Assembly: GCF_001194135.2 (NCBI RefSeq)
Contig: NC_068988.1
Location: 47,837,927-47,874,424 of the forward strand
DNA: 36,498 bases
Source of the DNA: Octopus bimaculoides
Lineage: Eukaryota
Direction: 5' to 3'
In this document: piece by piece, positions 4,685 to 35,935 of the stretch
Layout: each line of letters opens with the position of its first letter
How positions within the stretch are numbered: position 1 is the stretch's first letter
Position numbers and translations under genes: made by a program
Notes under the pieces: generated by a model
Seen by the model: the letters and a program-made list of their open reading frames with translations, nothing else
Told to the model about the DNA's origin: nothing
Databases searched by the model: none

Positions 4685-4793
4685 NNNNNNNNNNNNNNNN
4701 NNNNNNNNNNNNNNNNNNNNNNNNNNNNNNNNNNNNNNNNNNNNNNNNNNNNNNNNNNNNNNNNNNNNNNNNNNNNNNNNNNNNNNNNNNNNN

Positions 4794-4834
<41 letters not shown>

Positions 4835-10697: not shown

Positions 10698-11016
10698 NNN
10701 NNNNNNNNNNNNNNNNNNNNNNNNNNNNNNNNNNNNNNNNNNNNNNNNNNNNNNNNNNNNNNNNNNNNNNNNNNNNNNNNNNNNNNNNNNNNNNNNNNNN
10801 NNNNNNNNNNNNNNNNNNNNNNNNNNNNNNNNNNNNNNNNNNNNNNNNNNNNNNNNNNNNNNNNNNNNNNNNNNNNNNNNNNNNNNNNNNNNNNNNNNNN
10901 NNNNNNNNNNNNNNNNNNNNNNNNNNNNNNNNNNNNNNNNNNNNNNNNNNNNNNNNNNNNNNNNNNNNNNNNNNNNNNNNNNNNNNNNNNNNNNNNNNNN
11001 NNNNNNNNNNNNNNNN
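10698..11016. other. Assembly gap (N-run)
   Basis: N characters. Confidence 1.
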
Positions 11017-17257: not shown

Positions 17258-18032
17258 CAAAGGTTCTCAACCATTTTTTATCTATTGTTCCCTTTGATAC
17301 TATCTTATTCTGGTTGACTCCCACAGCCATTCAATGCTTACAAATTATTTTTAATGAAACTTATTTTAAAATTCCTATTTTGTTTTTCACACATTAATTT
17401 GTGTAGGTTGAACGCTTTACTCTTTCACTCTTTTACTCTTTTACTTGTTTCAGTCATTTGACTGTGGCCATGCTGGAGCACCACCTTTAGTCGAGCAAAT
17501 CAACCCCAGGACTTATTCTTTGGAAGCCTAGTACTTATTCTATCGGTCTCTTTTGCCGAACTGCTAAGTTACGGGGACATAAACACACCAGCATCGATTG
17601 TCAAGCGATGTTGGGGGGACAAACACAGACACACAAACATATACACACACATACATACACATATATGCACATATACGACGGGCTTCTTTTCAGTTTCCGT
17701 CTACCAAATCCACTCACAAGGCTTTGGTAAGCCCGAGGCTATAGTAAAAGACACTTGCCCAAGGTGCCACACAGTGGGACTGAACCCAGAACCATGTGGT
17801 TGGTAAGCAAGCTACTTACCACACAGCCACTCCTGCGCCTATGTAAAATGTTAGAGAAAGAAACCCAGCTGTTTCTTGCAATACATACCAATACACACAT
17901 CTAAAGCGAAACATTTTTAAGGGCCCTCAAAATACTATCATGGCTCCCCAATTTACTATTTTGTTATATGGTCCCTGCTAAAATCTTATATGAACCCTCA
18001 GCGGCCATATGGACCTCAATTGAGAACCACTG
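17258..18032. mobile_element. hAT-like MITE interrupted by a SINE
   Basis: Imperfect TIRs caaaggttctcaa (17258) and ttgagaaccactg (ends 18032); degenerate 8-bp flanks gtccagaa / gtctaaag (5 of 8 match). CAGTGGTTCTCAA-type ends with 8-bp TSDs are typical of hAT/Charlie-like MITEs. Confidence 0.65.
17416..17840 (-). mobile_element. Full-length tRNA-derived SINE (family A)
   Basis: Minus-strand head aggcgcaggagtggctgtgtgg (A-box-like), gggttcagtccc (B-box-like), CORE-like ccttgggcaagtg, internal (TG)n-like tract, tail (AAAAGAGT)n; near-identical copies elsewhere in the window. Confidence 0.95.
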
Positions 18033-18490: not shown

Positions 18491-18964
18491 AGGGGAAGTG
18501 AGGGAAGGGCGGAGGAGAGGAGAAGGGAGGAAGATGTGGGGACAAGGTGGTAGAAGAAGAAGGAAAGCTAGAGGAGGTGGAGGAGTTGGTGGAAGTGGAA
18601 GGAAAGGTGGAGGGGTGGAGGAGGAGGTAAAGAAGAAGAAGAAGAAGTAGAAGAAGAAGAGGAAGGAGGAGGAGGAGGAGAAGAAGAAGAAGAAGAAGAA
18701 GAAGAAACACATATTCCCTGCTTCAACTTTTCCTGCCACCAGCCATTCTCCAATTTTCCACTCTTGTGTCTTTCTCTCTGTCCTTTCCTCAATTTATTTA
18801 TCCACTCCCTTTGTGACATCCTGTACCTCTTTCATCAAGTGCTCATTCATGCATAACCATATTCTTTGGCACTATTATATCAAAGTTTCACTATGTACTG
18901 CTATGTAAAAAGAAAAAAAAAAGGGTAAATATATGGGAAGGATATAATCTCCAAAATAATATGT

Positions 18965-19403
18965 NNNNNNNNNNNNNNNNNNNNNNNNNNNNNNNNNNNN
19001 NNNNNNNNNNNNNNNNNNNNNNNNNNNNNNNNNNNNNNNNNNNNNNNNNNNNNNNNNNNNNNNNNNNNNNNNNNNNNNNNNNNNNNNNNNNNNNNNNNNN
19101 NNNNNNNNNNNNNNNNNNNNNNNNNNNNNNNNNNNNNNNNNNNNNNNNNNNNNNNNNNNNNNNNNNNNNNNNNNNNNNNNNNNNNNNNNNNNNNNNNNNN
19201 NNNNNNNNNNNNNNNNNNNNNNNNNNNNNNNNNNNNNNNNNNNNNNNNNNNNNNNNNNNNNNNNNNNNNNNNNNNNNNNNNNNNNNNNNNNNNNNNNNNN
19301 NNNNNNNNNNNNNNNNNNNNNNNNNNNNNNNNNATACATATATACTCATGAACATATATACATATATACTCATGAACATATATACATATATACTCATGAA
19401 CAT
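18965..19403. repeat. Assembly gap (18965-19333) followed by a 24-bp tandem repeat (ATATACATATATACTCATGAACAT), about 3 copies visible
   Basis: Direct reading; the 8-aa periodicity in the ORF track (MSIYVYMF) agrees. Confidence 0.9.
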
Positions 19404-24890: not shown

Positions 24891-25629
24891 TTATTATTAC
24901 TATTATTGTTGTTGTTGTTGTTGTTGTTGTTGTTATTTCAAGATTTCAGAGACGTTTGGTCGTTAGTTTGCACAGTTTGTATCACCGCAGAAATGTTTTA
25001 TCAAAGAAAGCCTTTATTCGAATCTTGGTGATTCCAAAGTTAAATTTGGTTAAGTTTGAACTGAAGACAGTGAATATTTTGGCTGATAATTTACCAACTC
25101 TGTTGCAGCACTTCTCTTAAACATTATTGTTGTTGTTGTTGTTGTTGTTGTAAAACCATAATGATAATATCAATAACAACAACAAAAAAGAGTGAAAATA
25201 AAGGATATAACTTTAAAAAGTTAAAAGTGATAACAGAAACAAATCTTGAATTAAATCTAAAAAAAATTCAGATTCTGGCAACCGTTATGACAATTTCAGT
25301 TTCAGACTTTGAGCAATCATTAACAAACTCTATTGGTTGCTTAAGGCGATGTGTATCTTTAATTTCTATTTGCCTTCTCAACAATCAGTGTATTGTTACA
25401 TTTTTTCTTGTTGCTTCTTTTCTGATTTATATTTTTAAACTGTGTCTTCATTGTGAAAATATTGTACTTTTGTGAGGAATCGATGCAGCCAATGTTACAC
25501 TGAAAGTCAAGCATTTGTCAGTGTGTGGCTGTCCAACAGTATGTATGCGTATATGTGTAAGTGCAAGTGTGTCTATACATATATATATATATATATCTTC
25601 ATTTTTATACATGTGTATGTATGTACAGT

Positions 25630-26017
25630 GGAGACGCAATGGCCCAGTGGTTAAGGCAGTGGACTCACGGACATAAGATCATGGTTTCAATTCCCAGACC
25701 AGGCGTTGTGAGTGTTTATTGAGCGAATACACCTAAAGCTCCACGAGGCTCCGGCAGGGGATGGTGGCAAACACTGTTGTACTCTTTCACCACAACTTTC
25801 TCTCGCTCTTACTTCCTGTTTCTGTTGTGCCTGTATTTCAAAGGGCCAGCCTTGTCACACTGTGTCACACTGAATATCCCCGAGAACTATGTTAAGGGTA
25901 CACGTGTGTGTGGAGTGCTCAGCCACTTGCACGTTAATTTCACGAGCAGGCTGTTCCATTGATTGGATCAACTGGAACCCTCGACGTCGTAAGCGACGGA
26001 GTGCAATCAATAACAAC
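25630..26017 (+). mobile_element. tRNA-derived SINE (family C), full length
   Basis: Head ggagacgcaatggcccagtggttaagg (A box) and ggtttcaattccc (B box); 3' module shared with 28361-28545; ends in (AAC)-like repeats. Confidence 0.88.
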
Positions 26018-26233
26018 ATGTATGTACAAGTGCTTATATACAAAGCTACACATACACACACGCACACGCATGCACACACACGTATATATTATAATGTACA
26101 CACAGGGTGTGATATGTAAATTATCACCATTTTATATTTTTAATTTCCCGCATGAACATTATTTGGTTTTAATTTTGTCGAATACACAGTTTAGTAAGGT
26201 CAGTTGGGTACCATCCGTGAGGAGAACAGCACC

Positions 26234-26820
26234 ATGAAACAATTCCCTCTACCAGGGATTTTGAAACAACATGCTGTACTGCTTGGCCTTTGTGCCAGAA
26301 GCTCCAATACAAACATTTCAGAGTGTTTGGGTGTCAATCTTAGGACAGTGTATGTACCGAGAGTGATACAAATCCCAAATCCAGATAACATCATATCATG
26401 GTGTTTAGAGTGATCCCTAGTGATGGCGACATTATACCTCCATTCATCTTCCCACACGGCCTCACACTCATCAGAGGGGCCTACATCAAGTGCCTGGAAG
26501 AGGTAGTGCTTCCCTGTGTCAAGAGGGTCTCTGCCAGAAACCTTATGTGTGGTAACAGGACTCTGCATTCTGCCACACAAGCAGGAGAACCCAGTCATGA
26601 CTGTCAGACAATTTCTGCGATCACATCACCTCTAACATCTGGCCACCTAACTCCCCAGATTGCACCCCACTTGATTATTATGTGAGGGGTGCAGTTGAGT
26701 GAGAGACCAACAGAACTCCTTGTAATGCCGAAGATGAACTGAAGGCAAGGATCATGGCAGCATTCACCAACTTAAACAAGGAGATCGTCCAGAAGAGTTG
26801 CAGGTGCTTCTGAGGTCATA
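26234..26820 (+). mobile_element. Internally deleted Tc1/mariner transposase pseudogene, DD37D (maT-type)
   Basis: MKQFPLPGILKQHAVLLGL…LGVNLRTV, then MVFRVIPSDGDIIPPFIFPHGL…, then QDSAFCHTSRRTQS*LSDNFCDHITSNIWPPNSPDCTPLDYYV…ELKARIMAAF. There are 37 residues between the D at 26559 and the D at 26673. Contains stops and frameshifts. Confidence 0.9.
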
Positions 26821-27953: not shown

Positions 27954-28325
27954 CTATTCATATCCGCACTCGGTCTGCTTAGGAGGTTGTTGTGTCCTAA
28001 CATGTGCTGCTTCGTTTAGTTTCCGTATTTTCCAGTGGTGTTCTCTGTCTATTATTTTAACTTCATTGCACAGGGGAAGGTGGTCTCCATTTTTCCATAC
28101 AGGATCAGCTATACCTGATTTATCAATAACTCCGTGTGTCACAGCTTTGCGATGTTCCTCTACCCTTATTTTGAGGGGACAGCATGTTTTGCCTTTGTAT
28201 AACCTACCACAGCTGCATGAGATGGAGTACACGCAGTCCTTGGTCCTATTCTCTTCTATTGCTAGTTTTACTCAAAGGAGATATTTGCGAAGTGTTGTAT
28301 TACTCTTGAATAGAGTATGGAATCT
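27954..28325 (-). mobile_element. Penelope-like element C-terminal GIY-YIG endonuclease remnant
   Basis: FHTLFKSNTTLRKYLL*VK…TKDCVYSISCSCGRLYKGKT…LKIRVEEHRKAV…KSGIADPVW…HLPL…EVKIIDREHHWKIRKLNEAAH; this matches the PLE pattern VY.I.C.CG..Y.G.T…R..EH…KS…H…V.I.D.E…R…EA. Confidence 0.9.
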
Positions 28326-29364: not shown

Positions 29365-29879
29365 NNNNNNNNNNNNNNNNNNNNNNNNNNNNNNNNNNNN
29401 NNNNNNNNNNNNNNNNNNNNNNNNNNNNNNNNNNNNNNNNNNNNNNNNNNNNNNNNNNNNNNNNNNNNNNNNNNNNNNNNNNNNNNNNNNNNNNNNNNNN
29501 NNNNNNNNNNNNNNNNNNNNNNNNNNNNNNNNNNNNNNNNNNNNNNNNNNNNNNNNNNNNNNNNNNNNNNNNNNNNNNNNNNNNNNNNNNNNNNNNNNNN
29601 NNNNNNNNNNNNNNNNNNNNNNNNNNNNNNNNNNNNNNNNNNNNNNNNNNNNNNNNNNNNNNNNNNNNNNNNNNNNNNNNNNNNNNNNNNNNNNNNNNNN
29701 NNNNNNNNNNNNNNNNNNNNNNNNNNNNNNNNNNNNNNNNNNNNNNNNNNNNNNNNNNNNNNNNNNNNNNNNNNNNNNNNNNNNNNNNNNNNNNNNNNNN
29801 NNNNNNNNNNATATATATATATATATATATATATAAATGCATATAGTGTATGTGAATATGAATACATTTATATGCATAT

Positions 29880-30373: not shown

Positions 30374-30855
30374 NNNNNNNNNNNNNNNNNNNNNNNNNNN
30401 NNNNNNNNNNNNNNNNNNNNNNNNNNNNNNNNNNNNNNNNNNNNNNNNNNNNNNNNNNNNNNNNNNNNNNNNNNNNNNNNNNNNNNNNNNNNNNNNNNNN
30501 NNNNNNNNNNNNNNNNNNNNNNNNNNNNNNNNNNNNNNNNNNNNNNNNNNNNNNNNNNNNNNNNNNNNNNNNNNNNNNNNNNNNNNNNNNNNNNNNNNNN
30601 NNNNNNNNNNNNNNNNNNNNNNNNNNNNNNNNNNNNNNNNNNNNNNNNNNNNNNNNNNNNNNNNNNNNNNNNNNNNNNNNNNNNNNNNNNNNNNNNNNNN
30701 NNNNNNNNNNNNNNNNNNNNNNNNNNNNNNNNNNNNNNNNNNNNNNNNNNNNNNNNNNNNNNNNNNNNNNNNNNNNNNNNNNNNNNNNNNNNCACATTAT
30801 ATAATTTTCTACTGTCTATATGCATATATGTGTTTATACATATAGGAAAACATAC

Positions 30856-32535: not shown

Positions 32536-32940
32536 AGGCGTATGAGCGGCTGTGTGGTAAGTAGCTTGCTTACCAACCACATGGTTCCGGGTTCAGTCCC
32601 ATTGCGTGGCATCTTGGGCAAGTGTCTTCTACTATAGCCTCGGGCCGACCAAAGCCTTGTGAGTGGATTTGGTAGACAGAAACTGAAAGAAGCCCGTCGT
32701 ATATATGTATGTGTGTACGTATTTGTGTGTCTGTGTTTGTCCCCCCAACATCGCTTGACAACCGATGCTGGTGTGTTTACATCCCCGTAACTTAGTAGTT
32801 CGGCAAAAGATACCGATAGAATAAGTACTAGGCTTCCAAAGAATAAGTACTGGGGTCGATTTGCTCAACTAAAGGCGCTGCTCCAGCATGGCCACAGACA
32901 AAAGACTGAAACAAGTAAAAAGAGTAAAAAGAGTAAAAAA
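32536..32940 (+). mobile_element. Full-length, well-preserved SINE family A
   Basis: Head aggcgtatgagcggctgtgtgg, B-box-like gggttcagtccc, tail (GTAAAAAGA)n; retains many CpGs. Confidence 0.95.
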
Positions 32941-33615: not shown

Positions 33616-34672
33616 ACCCACATGCACATGTGCATATGATTATAAAATGATTTTATAGCACAACACCTTCTGGCAAGTATCACATTGAAATTGATGAACT
33701 AGAAACCCTGCAATTTACAACAAGATCTCTTCATGGCAATAACAGCAACACTAAGTTGAGATTTAGTAAAAGCAATAATTGAACCAAAAAATAGAAATAT
33801 GGCCATTCACATTAAAAAAATCAGCCAAAATATGTTAAAAAATTCAGCCAAAAAGATTTCCTGAAGAGAAAGTTAAGTAATTAGAAGTGAGAATTTTGAA
33901 ATAGAAATGGTGATTAAAAAAGGCCTGCCAACTGTAAATTGAAAAGCATATCCTATTTAAATGGCCAACAGGGCCATATTAAATGTCATGTGATGAATGC
34001 AGGTCTAAATTTAATTGCAGCATATATTATGATGGAATCTATACTTAAATTGTCAGTCCCCAAATTGTTTCAACTTAAAATTTTTAACTCTCTTTAGTCT
34101 TTACAGCATCAAACATTGACATGAAATAGAAATGAATTGATTGAAGCTGTTAGAAATACTCTCAATGAAAAATACTAATGATAATGTTAAGTCATGTTTT
34201 TTCTTAACTTTGTAAACATGTATGAAGTACATCATGTTGTCAAGTTGAAATAATTTATAGCAAATTAGGAATATGTATAAAGGAAAAAACTTCCAAGTGA
34301 AAAATCAGCTACCAAATATCATTAAATGTAACACTAACAATACTTGAAGTGCGAGAAAAAAGAAAAAAAAAACATGCTTCTTATTTAACCTTTAATGTAA
34401 ATTAAATTATTTAAATGCTTCACAAAATTAATGGTTCCAAACACTGAATAAATAAACAATTTAATTTTCATTAAATTCGTATTTTATTTTTCTTTTATTT
34501 AAAAATCTAACAATTATTTTGGAATAAATTTCAAATGCAAAGTGTAAGAACTATTATGGGAAAAAGGTAGTTATATGTATAAAACATATACTAATGCAGT
34601 AATGGTGTACTGAATATATTAGTAGTGTTATCTTATATATAAAATTCCTATCATATTAAATGTATATACAGC

Positions 34673-34716
34673 AGAGTTTAGGATTCCTGGCTTTCACCAG
34701 GTGACCTGGGTTCGAT
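34673..34716 (+). pseudogene. tRNA-Glu(TTC)-derived fragment (D-arm 3' half to T-loop); not a functional tRNA
   Basis: gtttaggattcctggctttcaccaggtgacctgggttcga closely matches the metazoan tRNA-Glu(TTC) internal sequence as I recall it (GGTTAGGATTCCTGG[C/T]TTTCACCCAGG…CCCGGGTTCGA). Anticodon stem cctgg/ccagg with a 1-nt-short loop; acceptor stem and T-stem 3' strand are absent. Confidence 0.75.
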
Positions 34717-34937
34717 AGGGGCTGTAGAGAACTTTGTGAGGAATCTGGATGGTCAGGAACAGGTGGTCCTGACCTGCATTAAAGGCTTGGATTGGGCTCC
34801 GCAGGTGGCTGCGGAGGTCACAGCAAAAAATTATTTCTACATGGTGATAGATTCCTTTACCAAGGATGAATACAATGATCTCTTAATGATCCTGGCTTGC
34901 GACTGCAGGCAGCAAGAGACTTAATCGGGGAGGTAGA

Positions 34938-35083
34938 GTAAGAAGTCTTAGTGCCTCGATTTGAACTTGGTGATTTGGGTAAGAGGCTTAGTGCCTCAAG
35001 TTGAATATATTTGGTGAATTTTTTTGATTGGTAAGAGGCTCAGTGCCTCAATTTGTAACTGTAAGAGGTTCAACACCTCATTT
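34938..35083 (+). repeat. Array of four GTAAGAGGY-N5-RCCTC-A-TTG hairpin units
   Basis: Units start at 34938, 34979, 35031 and 35061; stems are GAGGC/GCCTC (twice) and GAGGT/ACCTC; the first unit is degenerate. Confidence 0.85.
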
Positions 35084-35250
35084 GTTTTTTTAAAAAAGAA
35101 CAATGTTATCAGGAAGTAACAATCGGCGGGCATTGACTGCTTCCCCCACCAAACATCTCTTTTTCCATTCCATCATCATTATTGTGTCTGTGTCCAGCCT
35201 GCAAGCTTCCATTAGTATTATGCCTTTATGGCAAATGTAATGAAATAAAG

Positions 35251-35389
35251 GAGCCTGTTTCCCAACCGCATGGTTCCAGGTTCAGACCCACTGAGTGACA
35301 CATGGGCAAGTATCTTCTACTATAGTCTCAGGCTGACTAGAGCCTTCTGAGTGGATTTGGGAGATAGAAACTGAAAGAAGCCTGGCACA

Positions 35390-35424
<35 letters not shown>

Positions 35425-35935
35425 ATGTGTGTGTGTGCAGGTACTGGAATCAATCCATTCTTTTATTCTTTTACTTGTTTCAGTCATTTGACTGTGGCAA
35501 TGCTGGAGCACCGCCTTTTAGTCGAGCACATCGACCCCAGGACTTATGCTTTGTAAGCCTAGTACTTATTCTATCGGTCTCTTTTTGCCAAACCACTAAG
35601 TTATGGGGACGTAAGCATACCAGCATTACATGTCAAACGATGTTGGGGGGACAAACACAGACATCCAAACACACACACATATATATATGACAGGCTCCTT
35701 TCAGTTTCCGTCTACCAAACCCACTCACAAGGCTTTGATCGGCCCAAGGCTATAGCAGATGACACTTGCCCAAGGTGCCACACAGTGAGACTGAACCCGG
35801 AACCATGTGGTTGTTCAGCAAGCTACTAACCACACAGCCACTCTGGCGCCTATTCAACTAAAAATTCATCAGGGTGATGCTCCACTATGGCCACAGCCTA
35901 ATGCTTGAAGCATGTAAAAAATAAACGATAAAAAA
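35251..35935 (+). mobile_element. Older, degenerate SINE-A-like copy split by a younger antisense SINE A
   Basis: Head and body at 35251-35383, (TG)n, gtactggaatcaatccattc at 35441-35460, continuing after the insertion as aactaaaa…gatgctccactatggccacagcc; compare 32847-32900. Confidence 0.75.
35461..35851 (-). mobile_element. Full-length SINE family A nested in the older copy, with apparent TSD ATTC
   Basis: Reverse complement matches 32536-32940; ATTC at 35457-35460 and 35852-35855. Confidence 0.92.

What the first reader, a model, noticed from the sequence alone, without database searches (positions are those of the whole stretch)
34673..34930. tRNA-Glu fragment fused to a GC-rich body with CAGGTG-containing hairpins: candidate undescribed structured RNA or SINE-like element
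Seen: an abrupt switch from about 23% GC (my count, 34501-34680) to about 49% GC (34681-34920), starting at a tRNA-Glu(TTC)-like fragment that retains a B box (GGTTCGA, 34709-34715). The body has two perfect 8-bp stems: GGTCAGGA-acaggtgg-TCCTGACC (34751-34774) and CTCCGCAG-gtgg-CTGCGGAG (34797-34816). It also has CCAGG-tga-CCTGG (34697-34709) and TCCTT-tacc-AAGGA (34853-34866). CAGGTG occurs in the first three of these hairpins. Two perfect 8-bp short-loop stems within about 250 nt is hard to explain by chance. It matches none of the other SINEs in the window. Inference: a folded Pol III transcript or tRNA-headed retroposon, or an element inserted into a tRNA gene.
Basis: partly seen in the sequence, partly recalled or inferred. 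Interest (0 to 1): 0.75.

Follow-up and report, generated by a model that had tools for sequence, protein, structure and literature searches.

The report
Probable truncated tRNA-Glu-derived SINE copy
This stretch of an octopus genome is most likely one worn, front-truncated copy of a small mobile element (SINE) that began as a glutamate tRNA gene and carries two tight hairpins. That is an ordinary kind of sequence, and I could not confirm it because no octopus genome or read data could be searched.

Summary
GC rises from about 0.24 to about 0.5 at 34673. Positions 34678-34715 match tRNA-Glu(UUC) positions 19-57 at 34/39 bases (alignment score 51; shuffles 13.3 ± 2.3). Two perfect 8-bp hairpins and three CAGGTG motifs are beyond chance (2/5000 and 0/5000 shuffles).

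The "structured RNA" reading is weak.
- Only the 81-nt double-hairpin module folds unusually well.
- The whole + strand folds no better than shuffles (z about -1.6 to -1.7).
- The stronger signal is on the - strand, which points to DNA palindromes rather than a strand-specific RNA.
- Rfam and ARAGORN find nothing.
- Most of box A, the T-stem 3' half and the acceptor stem are missing.

The layout is head, then body, then a tail of four ~30-52-nt stem-loop units (34938-35092) ending in a T-run. This fits a 5'-truncated tRNA-derived SINE.

The protein databases proved blind to octopus repeats. About 40 kb of other cephalopod-like DNA held no second copy. The open 80-codon frame has no credible homologue.

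Verdict: probably an uncharacterised, low-abundance SINE family member. Confidence is moderate and interest is low.

The parts
34673..34717 (+). tRNA-Glu(UUC)-derived head fragment, corresponding to tRNA positions about 14-58. It includes the anticodon-arm remnant CCTGG-CTTTCA-CCAGG (34686-34701, anticodon TTC at 34693-34695, loop one base short) and a box-B-like GGTTCGATAGG (34709-34719). Most of box A, the T-stem 3' half and the acceptor stem are missing.
   Evidence: 34/39 identity, score 51 against shuffles 13.3 ± 2.3; best box A candidate has 3 substitutions (CAGCAGAGTTT at 34669); no tRNA call by ARAGORN or Rfam; the head does not fold better than shuffles (z -0.39).
34718..34930 (+). 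Body, 48% GC, with no similarity to anything reachable. It contains the only exceptional structure.
   Evidence: Searches show no similarity to other repeats in the window or to O. vulgaris locus L016. One search gives the composition (CpG o/e 0.35, as depleted as the background at 0.26).
34745..34825 (+). Double-hairpin module. HP1 is GGTCAGGA-acaggtgg-TCCTGACC (34751-34774). HP2 is CTCCGCAG-gtgg-CTGCGGAG (34797-34816). Each has CAGGTGG at its centre.
   Evidence: 2/5000 shuffles have two such stems. (z -2.72 on the + strand, -4.04 on the - strand). (HP2 also reads as a 12-nt imperfect tandem, GGCTCCGCAGGT/GGCTGCGGAGGT).
34682..34924 (+). Open frame of 80 codons plus a TAA stop, spanning head and body. 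Judged non-coding.
   Evidence: translation. (no word-sharing candidate). (six weak hits, E 1e-5 to 1e-3, summed over several matched stretches in unrelated proteins; three of them carry PD40 beta-propeller repeats). (no Pfam family even at E up to 10). (not on record as a called gene).
34938..35092 (+). Tail of four diverged tandem units of 41, 52, 30 and 32 nt. Each starts with GTAAGAG or GTAAGAA and carries a 5-bp stem-loop (GAGGC-TYAGT-GCCTC in units 2 and 3; GAGGT-TCAAC-ACCTC in unit 4, one compensatory pair change; degraded in unit 1). T7 runs lie at 35019-35025 and 35085-35091, the latter followed by A6.
   Evidence: units, spacing 40/52/30, T-runs. (the two 3'-most stem-loops dominate the fold of 35025-35092). 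(stem plus T-run pattern at 35065-35079).
35093..35247 (.). 155 bp of 39% GC sequence between the tail and the next SINE. Whether it belongs to the element is undecided.
   Evidence: neighbouring SINE copies all start at 35248; this stretch matches nothing in the window. (composition).

Best explanation
Positions 34673-35092 are one old, 5'-truncated genomic copy of a tRNA-Glu(UUC)-derived SINE (class SINE2) in an octopod genome.

Inferred mechanism, taken from what is established for tRNA-derived SINEs:
- A master copy is transcribed by RNA polymerase III from internal A and B boxes inherited from the tRNA.
- Transcription runs through a non-tRNA body to a T-run.
- A partner LINE's reverse transcriptase recognises the 3' stem-loop units and copies the RNA into a nicked target (target-primed reverse transcription).

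This copy stopped, or decayed, about 13-18 nt short of the RNA's 5' end. It has therefore lost most of box A and should be transcriptionally dead by itself. The two perfect GC-rich hairpins are a feature of the family's body, possibly for RNA stability or protein binding. They are not evidence of an independent RNA gene.

Shown here: the tRNA-Glu origin of the head, its orientation and position at the sharp 5' boundary, the non-random hairpins, the repeated stem-loop tail and the T-runs.

Inferred only: multi-copy status, retrotransposition, the LINE partner and Pol III transcription.
For: - The head is tRNA-Glu-like in the sense orientation, exactly where GC jumps.
- A box-B-like motif is retained.
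- The tripartite head-body-tail layout and the 420-bp length are typical of SINEs.
- The tail consists of four paralogous stem-loop units with one compensatory stem change between units, and ends in T7 followed by an A-rich stretch.
- The hairpins are beyond chance, so they were inherited as a unit rather than arising in situ.
- The element sits in a cluster of other SINE insertions.
- The host is an octopod, shown by relatives of window repeats in Octopus vulgaris. In octopods SINEs make up about 40% of the transposable-element complement (PMC8967140).
- tRNA-Glu-headed SINEs are documented in other molluscs: the Vhc_1 SINEs of bivalves (PMC4758252).
- There is no protein homology, no Rfam family and no tRNA call.
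Against: - No second copy was seen in the 36.5-kb window, in 20 kb of O. vulgaris chromosome, or in 20 kb of an ENA contig of unknown organism that carries a relative of the window's ORF. The abundant octopus SINEs occur 4-8 times in the same DNA.
- The only target-site-duplication candidate (AATGTATATACAG at 34659-34671 against AATGTTATCAG at 35102-35112) is matched by 18-28% of random pairs.
- The 3' boundary is not marked by a return to AT-rich sequence.
- A T7 run inside the tail (35019-35025) would stop Pol III before the last two units.
- tRNA homology ends abruptly after the T-loop, which could equally be a junction between two unrelated fragments.
- No partner LINE tail was found.
Confidence: 0.55

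Rival explanations
1. A patchwork or another class of mobile element. One option is that the 45-nt tRNA-Glu piece is a leftover of one element (or a tRNA retro-pseudogene) cut off by a second, unrelated insertion. The other is that the whole block is a fragment or solo LTR of a non-SINE element carrying a tRNA-like promoter, such as a Helenus-type TRIM, or a DNA-transposon or MITE fragment whose palindromes are protein-binding sites.
For: - tRNA homology stops abruptly at 34716-34717, before the T-stem 3' half.
- The strongest folding signal is strand-symmetric, as for DNA palindromes.
- There is no significant target-site duplication.
- Helenus elements with tRNA-like LTR sequences exist in molluscs (PMC10886601).
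- The locus is a pile-up of insertions.
Against: - There is no second LTR-like copy within 34 kb upstream or 1.4 kb downstream.
- No terminal inverted repeats flank the block.
- The head lies in the sense orientation exactly at the 5' edge. That is expected for a SINE and would be coincidental for a patchwork.
Confidence: 0.17
2. A single-copy locus. A decayed tRNA-Glu pseudogene remnant lies next to unique GC-richer DNA that serves the host. That DNA could be an exon of a Pol II transcript or lncRNA, or a regulatory module built from E-box (CAGGTG) and AGGTCA-type hexamers.
For: - No other copy is seen anywhere reachable.
- There are three CAGGTG motifs (0/5000 shuffles) and three AGGTCA/TGACCT hexamers.
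- The + strand carries many 5' splice-site-like motifs (3 CAGGT, 4 GTAAGA), against 2 CAGGT and no GTAAGA on the - strand.
- An 80-codon open frame ends where the GC-rich body ends.
Against: - The motifs are not independent, because they are all parts of the same palindromes and repeat units.
- CpG depletion equals the background.
- The frame has no homologue.
- The chance of an 80-codon open frame in 49% GC sequence is about 0.1 over six frames (my estimate).
Confidence: 0.13
3. A functional Pol III-transcribed structured non-coding RNA gene of a new family. It would have a tRNA-type internal promoter, a two-hairpin core and a T-run terminator.
For: - A box-B-like motif is present.
- T7 runs at 35019 and 35085 could terminate Pol III.
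- The hairpin module is beyond chance.
- There is one compensatory change between tail units.
Against: - Box A is largely missing: the best candidate has 3 substitutions in 9 specified positions.
- The whole-transcript fold is at shuffle level on the + strand.
- The head, the 3' body and the tail each have z between -1.2 and +0.2.
- There is no Rfam match.
- CpG decay is like neutral DNA.
Confidence: 0.05
4. A protein-coding (terminal) exon using the frame 34682-34924, followed by a 3' UTR.
For: - The frame is open for 80 codons and has an AG at 34680-34681.
- It shows a weak resemblance to PD40 beta-propeller repeats.
Against: - The six HMMER hits are summed over several matched stretches in unrelated proteins and are not credible.
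- There is no Pfam hit even at E up to 10.
- No word-sharing protein was found among 5.8 billion clusters, a set that does contain annotated Octopus vulgaris proteins.
- Part of the frame is read from a tRNA-derived sequence.
Confidence: 0.03

Closest known systems
tRNA-derived SINEs (SINE2), in particular the tRNA-Glu-headed Vhc_1 SINEs of pteriomorph bivalves (Matetovici et al. 2016, PMC4758252)
   Same: A tRNA-Glu-derived head in the sense orientation at the 5' end, an unrelated body, a separate tail, a length of a few hundred bp, and a mollusc host.
   Different: No V or other highly conserved domain could be recognised. The consensus sequences are not held as text, so this comparison could not be run. 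Neither multi-copy status nor target-site duplications could be shown: copy number was untestable and the one duplication candidate is at chance level. The tail is a set of ~30-52-nt stem-loop units, not a short tandem repeat or a recognised CR1 tail.
Octopus SINEs OK, OR1 and OR2 (Ohshima & Okada 1994), and the abundant tRNA-Core and tRNA-Deu SINEs of octopus genomes (PMC8967140)
   Same: The same host group, the same general architecture, and location in a cluster with such SINEs.
   Different: There is no sequence similarity to the two abundant SINE types present in the window or in O. vulgaris locus L016. By my recollection the classical families derive from tRNA-Lys and tRNA-Arg, not tRNA-Glu. 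This was not checked, because the 1994 paper is not held.
Ceph-SINEs of squids and cuttlefish (Akasaki et al. 2010; motifs quoted in PMC5786205)
   Same: Cephalopod tRNA-derived SINEs with a distinctive body.
   Different: The quoted Ceph-domain motifs are not in the element in the sense orientation. CCTCCAGCTATGGGTTAAATAGT is absent even with up to 3 substitutions. CCTTGGGAAAG occurs only with one mismatch, on the opposite strand, inside a palindrome.
Helenus TRIMs (Kojima 2024, PMC10886601)
   Same: Small non-autonomous retroelements whose repeats carry a tRNA-like Pol III promoter. They are present in molluscs.
   Different: Helenus needs two LTRs with a primer-binding site and polypurine tract between them, or a solo LTR with 4-bp target-site duplications. 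There is no second LTR copy in the window.

Membership tests
Functional tRNA gene (tRNA-Glu) | Cloverleaf with acceptor stem, D, anticodon and T arms, detectable by tRNA finders | tested here: not met
   ARAGORN finds 0 genes. Rfam's tRNA model gives no hit at E up to 10 on 91 nt. Only tRNA positions about 14-58 are recognisable.
tRNA-derived SINE (SINE2) | 5' head derived from a tRNA, in the sense orientation | tested here: met
   34/39 identity to tRNA-Glu(TTC) positions 19-57, score 51 against shuffles 13.3 ± 2.3. It lies at the 5' compositional boundary.
tRNA-derived SINE (SINE2) | Internal Pol III promoter: box A (TRGCNNAGTGG) and box B (GGTTCGANNCC) | tested here: inconclusive
   The box B core GGTTCGA is present, and GGTTCGATAGG differs at the last two specified positions. 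The best box A candidate has 3 substitutions. This is consistent with a 5'-truncated dead copy, but the copy itself lacks a full promoter.
tRNA-derived SINE (SINE2) | Many dispersed copies in the genome | not testable with these tools
The protein databases are blind to octopus repeats, as the control shows. One copy was seen in about 77 kb of available DNA.
tRNA-derived SINE (SINE2) | Target-site duplications flanking the insert | tested here: inconclusive
   The best candidate, 34659-34671 against 35102-35112 (11 matches, 2 gaps), scores no better than 18-28% of random pairs.
tRNA-derived SINE (SINE2) | 3' tail shared with a partner LINE, or an A-rich or simple-repeat end | tested here: inconclusive
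   A tail of four stem-loop units ends in T7 followed by A6. No LINE with a matching tail is in the window, L016 or L017.
SINE superfamilies with conserved central domains (CORE, Ceph) | Presence of the domain's signature sequence in the body | tested here: not met
   The Ceph motifs from PMC5786205 are absent in the sense orientation. There is no similarity to the window's CORE-like SINE.
SINE superfamilies V, Deu, Nin-DC, Meta | Presence of the domain's signature sequence in the body | not testable with these tools
   The consensus sequences are not held as text.
Helenus/TRIM (tRNA-bearing LTR element) | Two LTR copies within about 1 kb with a primer-binding site and polypurine tract between them | tested here: not met
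   No second copy of any part of 34601-35120 exists in the window. A solo LTR cannot be excluded.
Known structured RNA family (Rfam 15) | Covariance-model match at or near the gathering score | tested here: not met
   There are no gathering-level hits in the window. Only sub-threshold chance hits (E at least 1.2) appear in three focused scans.

The most novel reading that the evidence does not exclude
The block represents an undescribed octopod-specific Pol III RNA or SINE family. Its two-hairpin CAGGTGG module and repeated tail stem-loops would be kept by selection on structure, for example as binding sites for a reverse transcriptase or a host protein. Copies could then have been recruited as regulatory or RNA elements.
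Probability: 0.07. Interest if true: 0.5.

Novelty: new member of a known kind. Interest (0 to 1): 0.2.

Why it matters
If the SINE reading is right, this is one more lineage-specific tRNA-derived SINE in a genome already known to be flooded with SINEs. It would be useful for repeat annotation and for avoiding false tRNA or ncRNA calls, but it changes no concept. It would matter more only if genome-wide copies or orthologues showed that the two hairpins co-vary. That would give a SINE body with a selected RNA structure, a long-standing puzzle about SINE "bodies".

Tried and rejected
1. Copy number and expression from reads. The look-up of sequencing runs and read laying were both closed, so nothing was obtained. 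The read-laying run used Logan run accessions that the look-up of encoding contigs had reported.

2. Finding copies through translated frames.
- The search for homologous proteins on the 80-aa frame found nothing.
- A control using an ORF from an abundant octopus SINE also found nothing. These negatives therefore say nothing about copy number.
- The full HMMER scan gave only chance hits to unrelated proteins with several matched stretches.
- Three exact-ORF look-ups were not on record.

3. Pattern scans of public collections.
- The metagenome scan gave 6 hits in GC-rich contigs, with no similarity to the element beyond the pattern itself.
- The viral scans gave no hit for two patterns, and nine hits that matched only the 18-mer itself.
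- The GTDB genome scan gave none.

4. Octopus DNA reached indirectly. 20 kb of O. vulgaris chromosome OX597819.1 and 20 kb of an ENA contig are not syntenic with the window and hold no copy.

5. Literature.
- No paper text contains any of six 15-18-mers from the element.
- Supplements with SINE consensus sequences are not held.
- The octopus genome paper is not held.

6. Ideas considered and dropped.
- Similarity of the tail to the MIR/CORE core (20/25 matches, but z only 1.7).
- A Ceph-domain motif found on the wrong strand.
- Box-A-like and box-B-like motifs inside tail units 3 and 4. Their spacing is too short for a tRNA, ARAGORN is negative, and the units are paralogues of each other.
- A Helitron 3' hairpin, because no CTRR end is present by inspection.
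- A poly(A) signal at 35241. By eye it appears to lie in the decayed head of the next SINE; the aligned copies themselves begin at 35248.
- The target-site-duplication candidates TGTTATC and TGAATATATT are at chance level or lie inside the tail.

Full report
**What is there**

The window is AT-rich (33-35% GC overall; 23.8% in 34000-34672). GC rises abruptly to about 0.5 at 34673.
- GGTTCGA at 34709-34715;
- the perfect 8-bp hairpins at 34751-34774 and 34797-34816;
- the 5-bp hairpins at 34697-34709 and 34853-34866;
- three CAGGTG motifs.

**The tRNA likeness is real and specific**

Positions 34678-34715 align with tRNA-Glu(UUC) positions 19-57 at 34/39 identities with one 1-nt gap in the anticodon loop. 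The local score is 51, against 13.3 ± 2.3 (maximum 24) for dinucleotide shuffles. Glu-UUC is the best of eight tRNAs tried.

By eye the likeness may extend to 34673 (AG-G of the D-loop). Upstream of that the sequence is ordinary AT-rich flank.

What is missing matters:
- The first 13-18 nt of the tRNA are absent. The best box A candidate has three substitutions.
- The T-stem 3' half and the acceptor 3' strand are absent.
- ARAGORN finds no tRNA in the window.
- Rfam's tRNA model finds nothing, even in a 91-nt search.
- The head does not fold better than shuffles (z -0.39).

**Are the hairpins more than chance?**

Yes.
- Two perfect short-loop stems of at least 8 bp occurred in 2 of 5000 dinucleotide shuffles of 34673-34930.
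- Three CAGGTG motifs occurred in none of the 5000.
- Of only three GC-rich perfect 8-bp hairpins in the whole 36.5 kb, two are here.

The signal is confined to an 81-nt module, 34745-34825. It scores z -2.72 on the + strand and -4.04 on the - strand.
- The whole reader interval scores z -1.59 on the + strand (14/200 shuffles as good) and -3.90 on the - strand.
- The 420-nt block scores -1.71 on the + strand and -4.83 on the - strand.
- The head, the 3' body and the tail are each at shuffle level.

The + strand is G/T-rich, so its shuffles fold well through G-U pairs. The asymmetry therefore marks Watson-Crick palindromes in DNA. It is not evidence for a + strand RNA structure.

The CAGGTG copies are not independent. 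All three sit in a recurring CAGGTG(R)-CCTG-type palindromic motif, and one was created inside the tRNA part by a 1-nt deletion and a C-to-T change. AGGTCA/TGACCT hexamers (34702, 34770, 34815) belong to the same palindromes.

**The block is longer than reported**

Downstream of 34930 lie four diverged tandem units at 34938-34978, 34979-35030, 35031-35060 and 35061-35092.
- Each begins with GTAAGAG or GTAAGAA and carries a 5-bp stem-loop.
- Units 2 and 3 have GAGGC-TYAGT-GCCTC. Unit 4 has GAGGT-TCAAC-ACCTC, so a C-to-T change in one arm is matched by a G-to-A change in the other. Unit 1 is degraded.
- T7 runs lie at 35019-35025 and 35085-35091, the latter followed by A6.
- The next 155 bp (35093-35247, 39% GC) match nothing.
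- From 35248 onwards come copies of abundant SINEs that recur through the window and in Octopus vulgaris.

**Coding?**

An 80-codon frame (34682-34921, TAA at 34922) is open. I judge it non-coding.
- The word-indexed search found no candidate.
- The exhaustive HMMER scan of 1.84 billion representatives gave six hits at E 1e-5 to 1e-3. All are summed over several matched stretches in unrelated proteins, three of which carry PD40 beta-propeller repeats.
- Pfam finds nothing even at E up to 10.
- An open frame of this length in 49% GC sequence is expected about once in ten such blocks (my estimate).

**Comparative evidence: what I could and could not get**

- No tool searches eukaryotic genomes.
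- A control showed that the protein collections do not contain ORFs from even the most abundant octopus SINE. The negative results therefore say nothing about copy number.
- Pattern scans of metagenomes, viral contigs and GTDB genomes gave only chance matches.
- A repeat-borne ORF of the window (27954-28232) has 81-83% relatives in Octopus vulgaris and elsewhere. This identifies the host as an octopod. It also gave 20 kb of O. vulgaris chromosome and 20 kb of an ENA contig. Neither is syntenic with the window, and neither holds a copy of the element. The abundant SINEs, by contrast, are present there at 84-90% identity.
- The element shows no similarity to those SINEs.
- The best target-site-duplication candidate is not significant.

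**Interpretation**

The anatomy is that of a tRNA-derived SINE: a sense-oriented tRNA fragment with a box-B-like motif at a sharp 5' boundary, an unrelated body, and a tail of repeated stem-loops ending in a T-run. The whole is 420 bp and lies among other SINEs.

The host supports this reading. SINEs dominate the octopod transposable-element complement (PMC8967140), and tRNA-Glu-headed SINEs are known in other molluscs (PMC4758252).

I therefore read 34673-35092 as a 5'-truncated, CpG-decayed (o/e 0.32 against 0.26 background) copy of a low-abundance tRNA-Glu-derived SINE, at confidence 0.55. Pol III transcription of a master copy, LINE-mediated reverse transcription through the tail stem-loops, and multi-copy status are all inferred, not shown.

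The rivals are:
- a patchwork or another element class (0.17);
- a single-copy locus with host function (0.13);
- a live structured Pol III RNA gene (0.05);
- a coding exon (0.03).

The reading "an element inserted into a tRNA gene" is rejected, because the tRNA's 3' remainder is not downstream.

**Comparison with known families**

The element is not a tRNA gene and not in Rfam. It lacks the Ceph motifs quoted in PMC5786205 in the sense orientation, and it shows no CORE likeness. It is unrelated to the abundant octopus SINEs. There is no LTR pair for a Helenus-type TRIM (PMC10886601). Membership in the V, Deu, Nin-DC or Meta superfamilies could not be tested, because the consensus sequences are not held.

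**Verdict**

This is most likely an ordinary SINE copy of an uncharacterised family. Interest is low unless genome-wide copies show covarying stems.

Noticed in passing
window 27954-28232 (-): A 92-aa ORF with a GIY-YIG-like look by eye has 81-83% relatives in Octopus vulgaris (an NCBI 'Hypothetical predicted protein' on chromosome OX597819.1) and in ENA and Logan contigs. It is probably part of a Penelope-like or other repeat. There is no Pfam hit. It identifies the host as an octopod.
   Followed up: partly
window 17420-17836, 32542-32933 (-), 35459-35843; also 35248-35437 and its copies at 32559, 17817 (-), 20546 and 9687: Two abundant SINE-type repeats. One is a unit of about 415 bp that is 84-90% identical to O. 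vulgaris L016:1543-1956. The other is a shorter CORE-like unit ending in (TG)n. They often lie adjacent to each other.
   Followed up: partly
window 25628-26004: Another repeat family, with three copies (83-90% identity) in the 20-kb O. vulgaris locus L016.
   Followed up: no
window 35093-35247: A 155-bp stretch of 39% GC between the element's T-run and the next SINE matches nothing in the window. It is unclear whether it belongs to the element, to another old insert, or to the original target.
   Followed up: partly
window 34673-35092 (+): 5' splice-site-like motifs lean towards the + strand: 3 CAGGT and 4 GTAAGA on the + strand, against 2 CAGGT and no GTAAGA on the - strand. If the block lies in an intron in the sense orientation, it could offer cryptic donor or U1-binding sites.
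   Followed up: no
window 35036-35046 and 35067-35077: Tail units 3 and 4 contain a box-A-like GGCTCAGTGC and a box-B-like GGTTCAACACC (1 mismatch), followed by a T-run. The spacing is too short for a tRNA, ARAGORN is negative, and this is probably chance within paralogous units.
   Followed up: partly
window 26200-26685: Overlapping ORFs on both strands look by eye like a decayed Tc1/mariner transposase C-terminus. There is no Pfam hit.
   Followed up: partly
window, several places (for example 4700-4800, 10700-11000, 18900-19330, 29400-29830, 30380-30790): Runs of N (assembly gaps), usually next to (TA)n or (TG)n microsatellites, show that the source is a gapped short-read scaffold.
   Followed up: no
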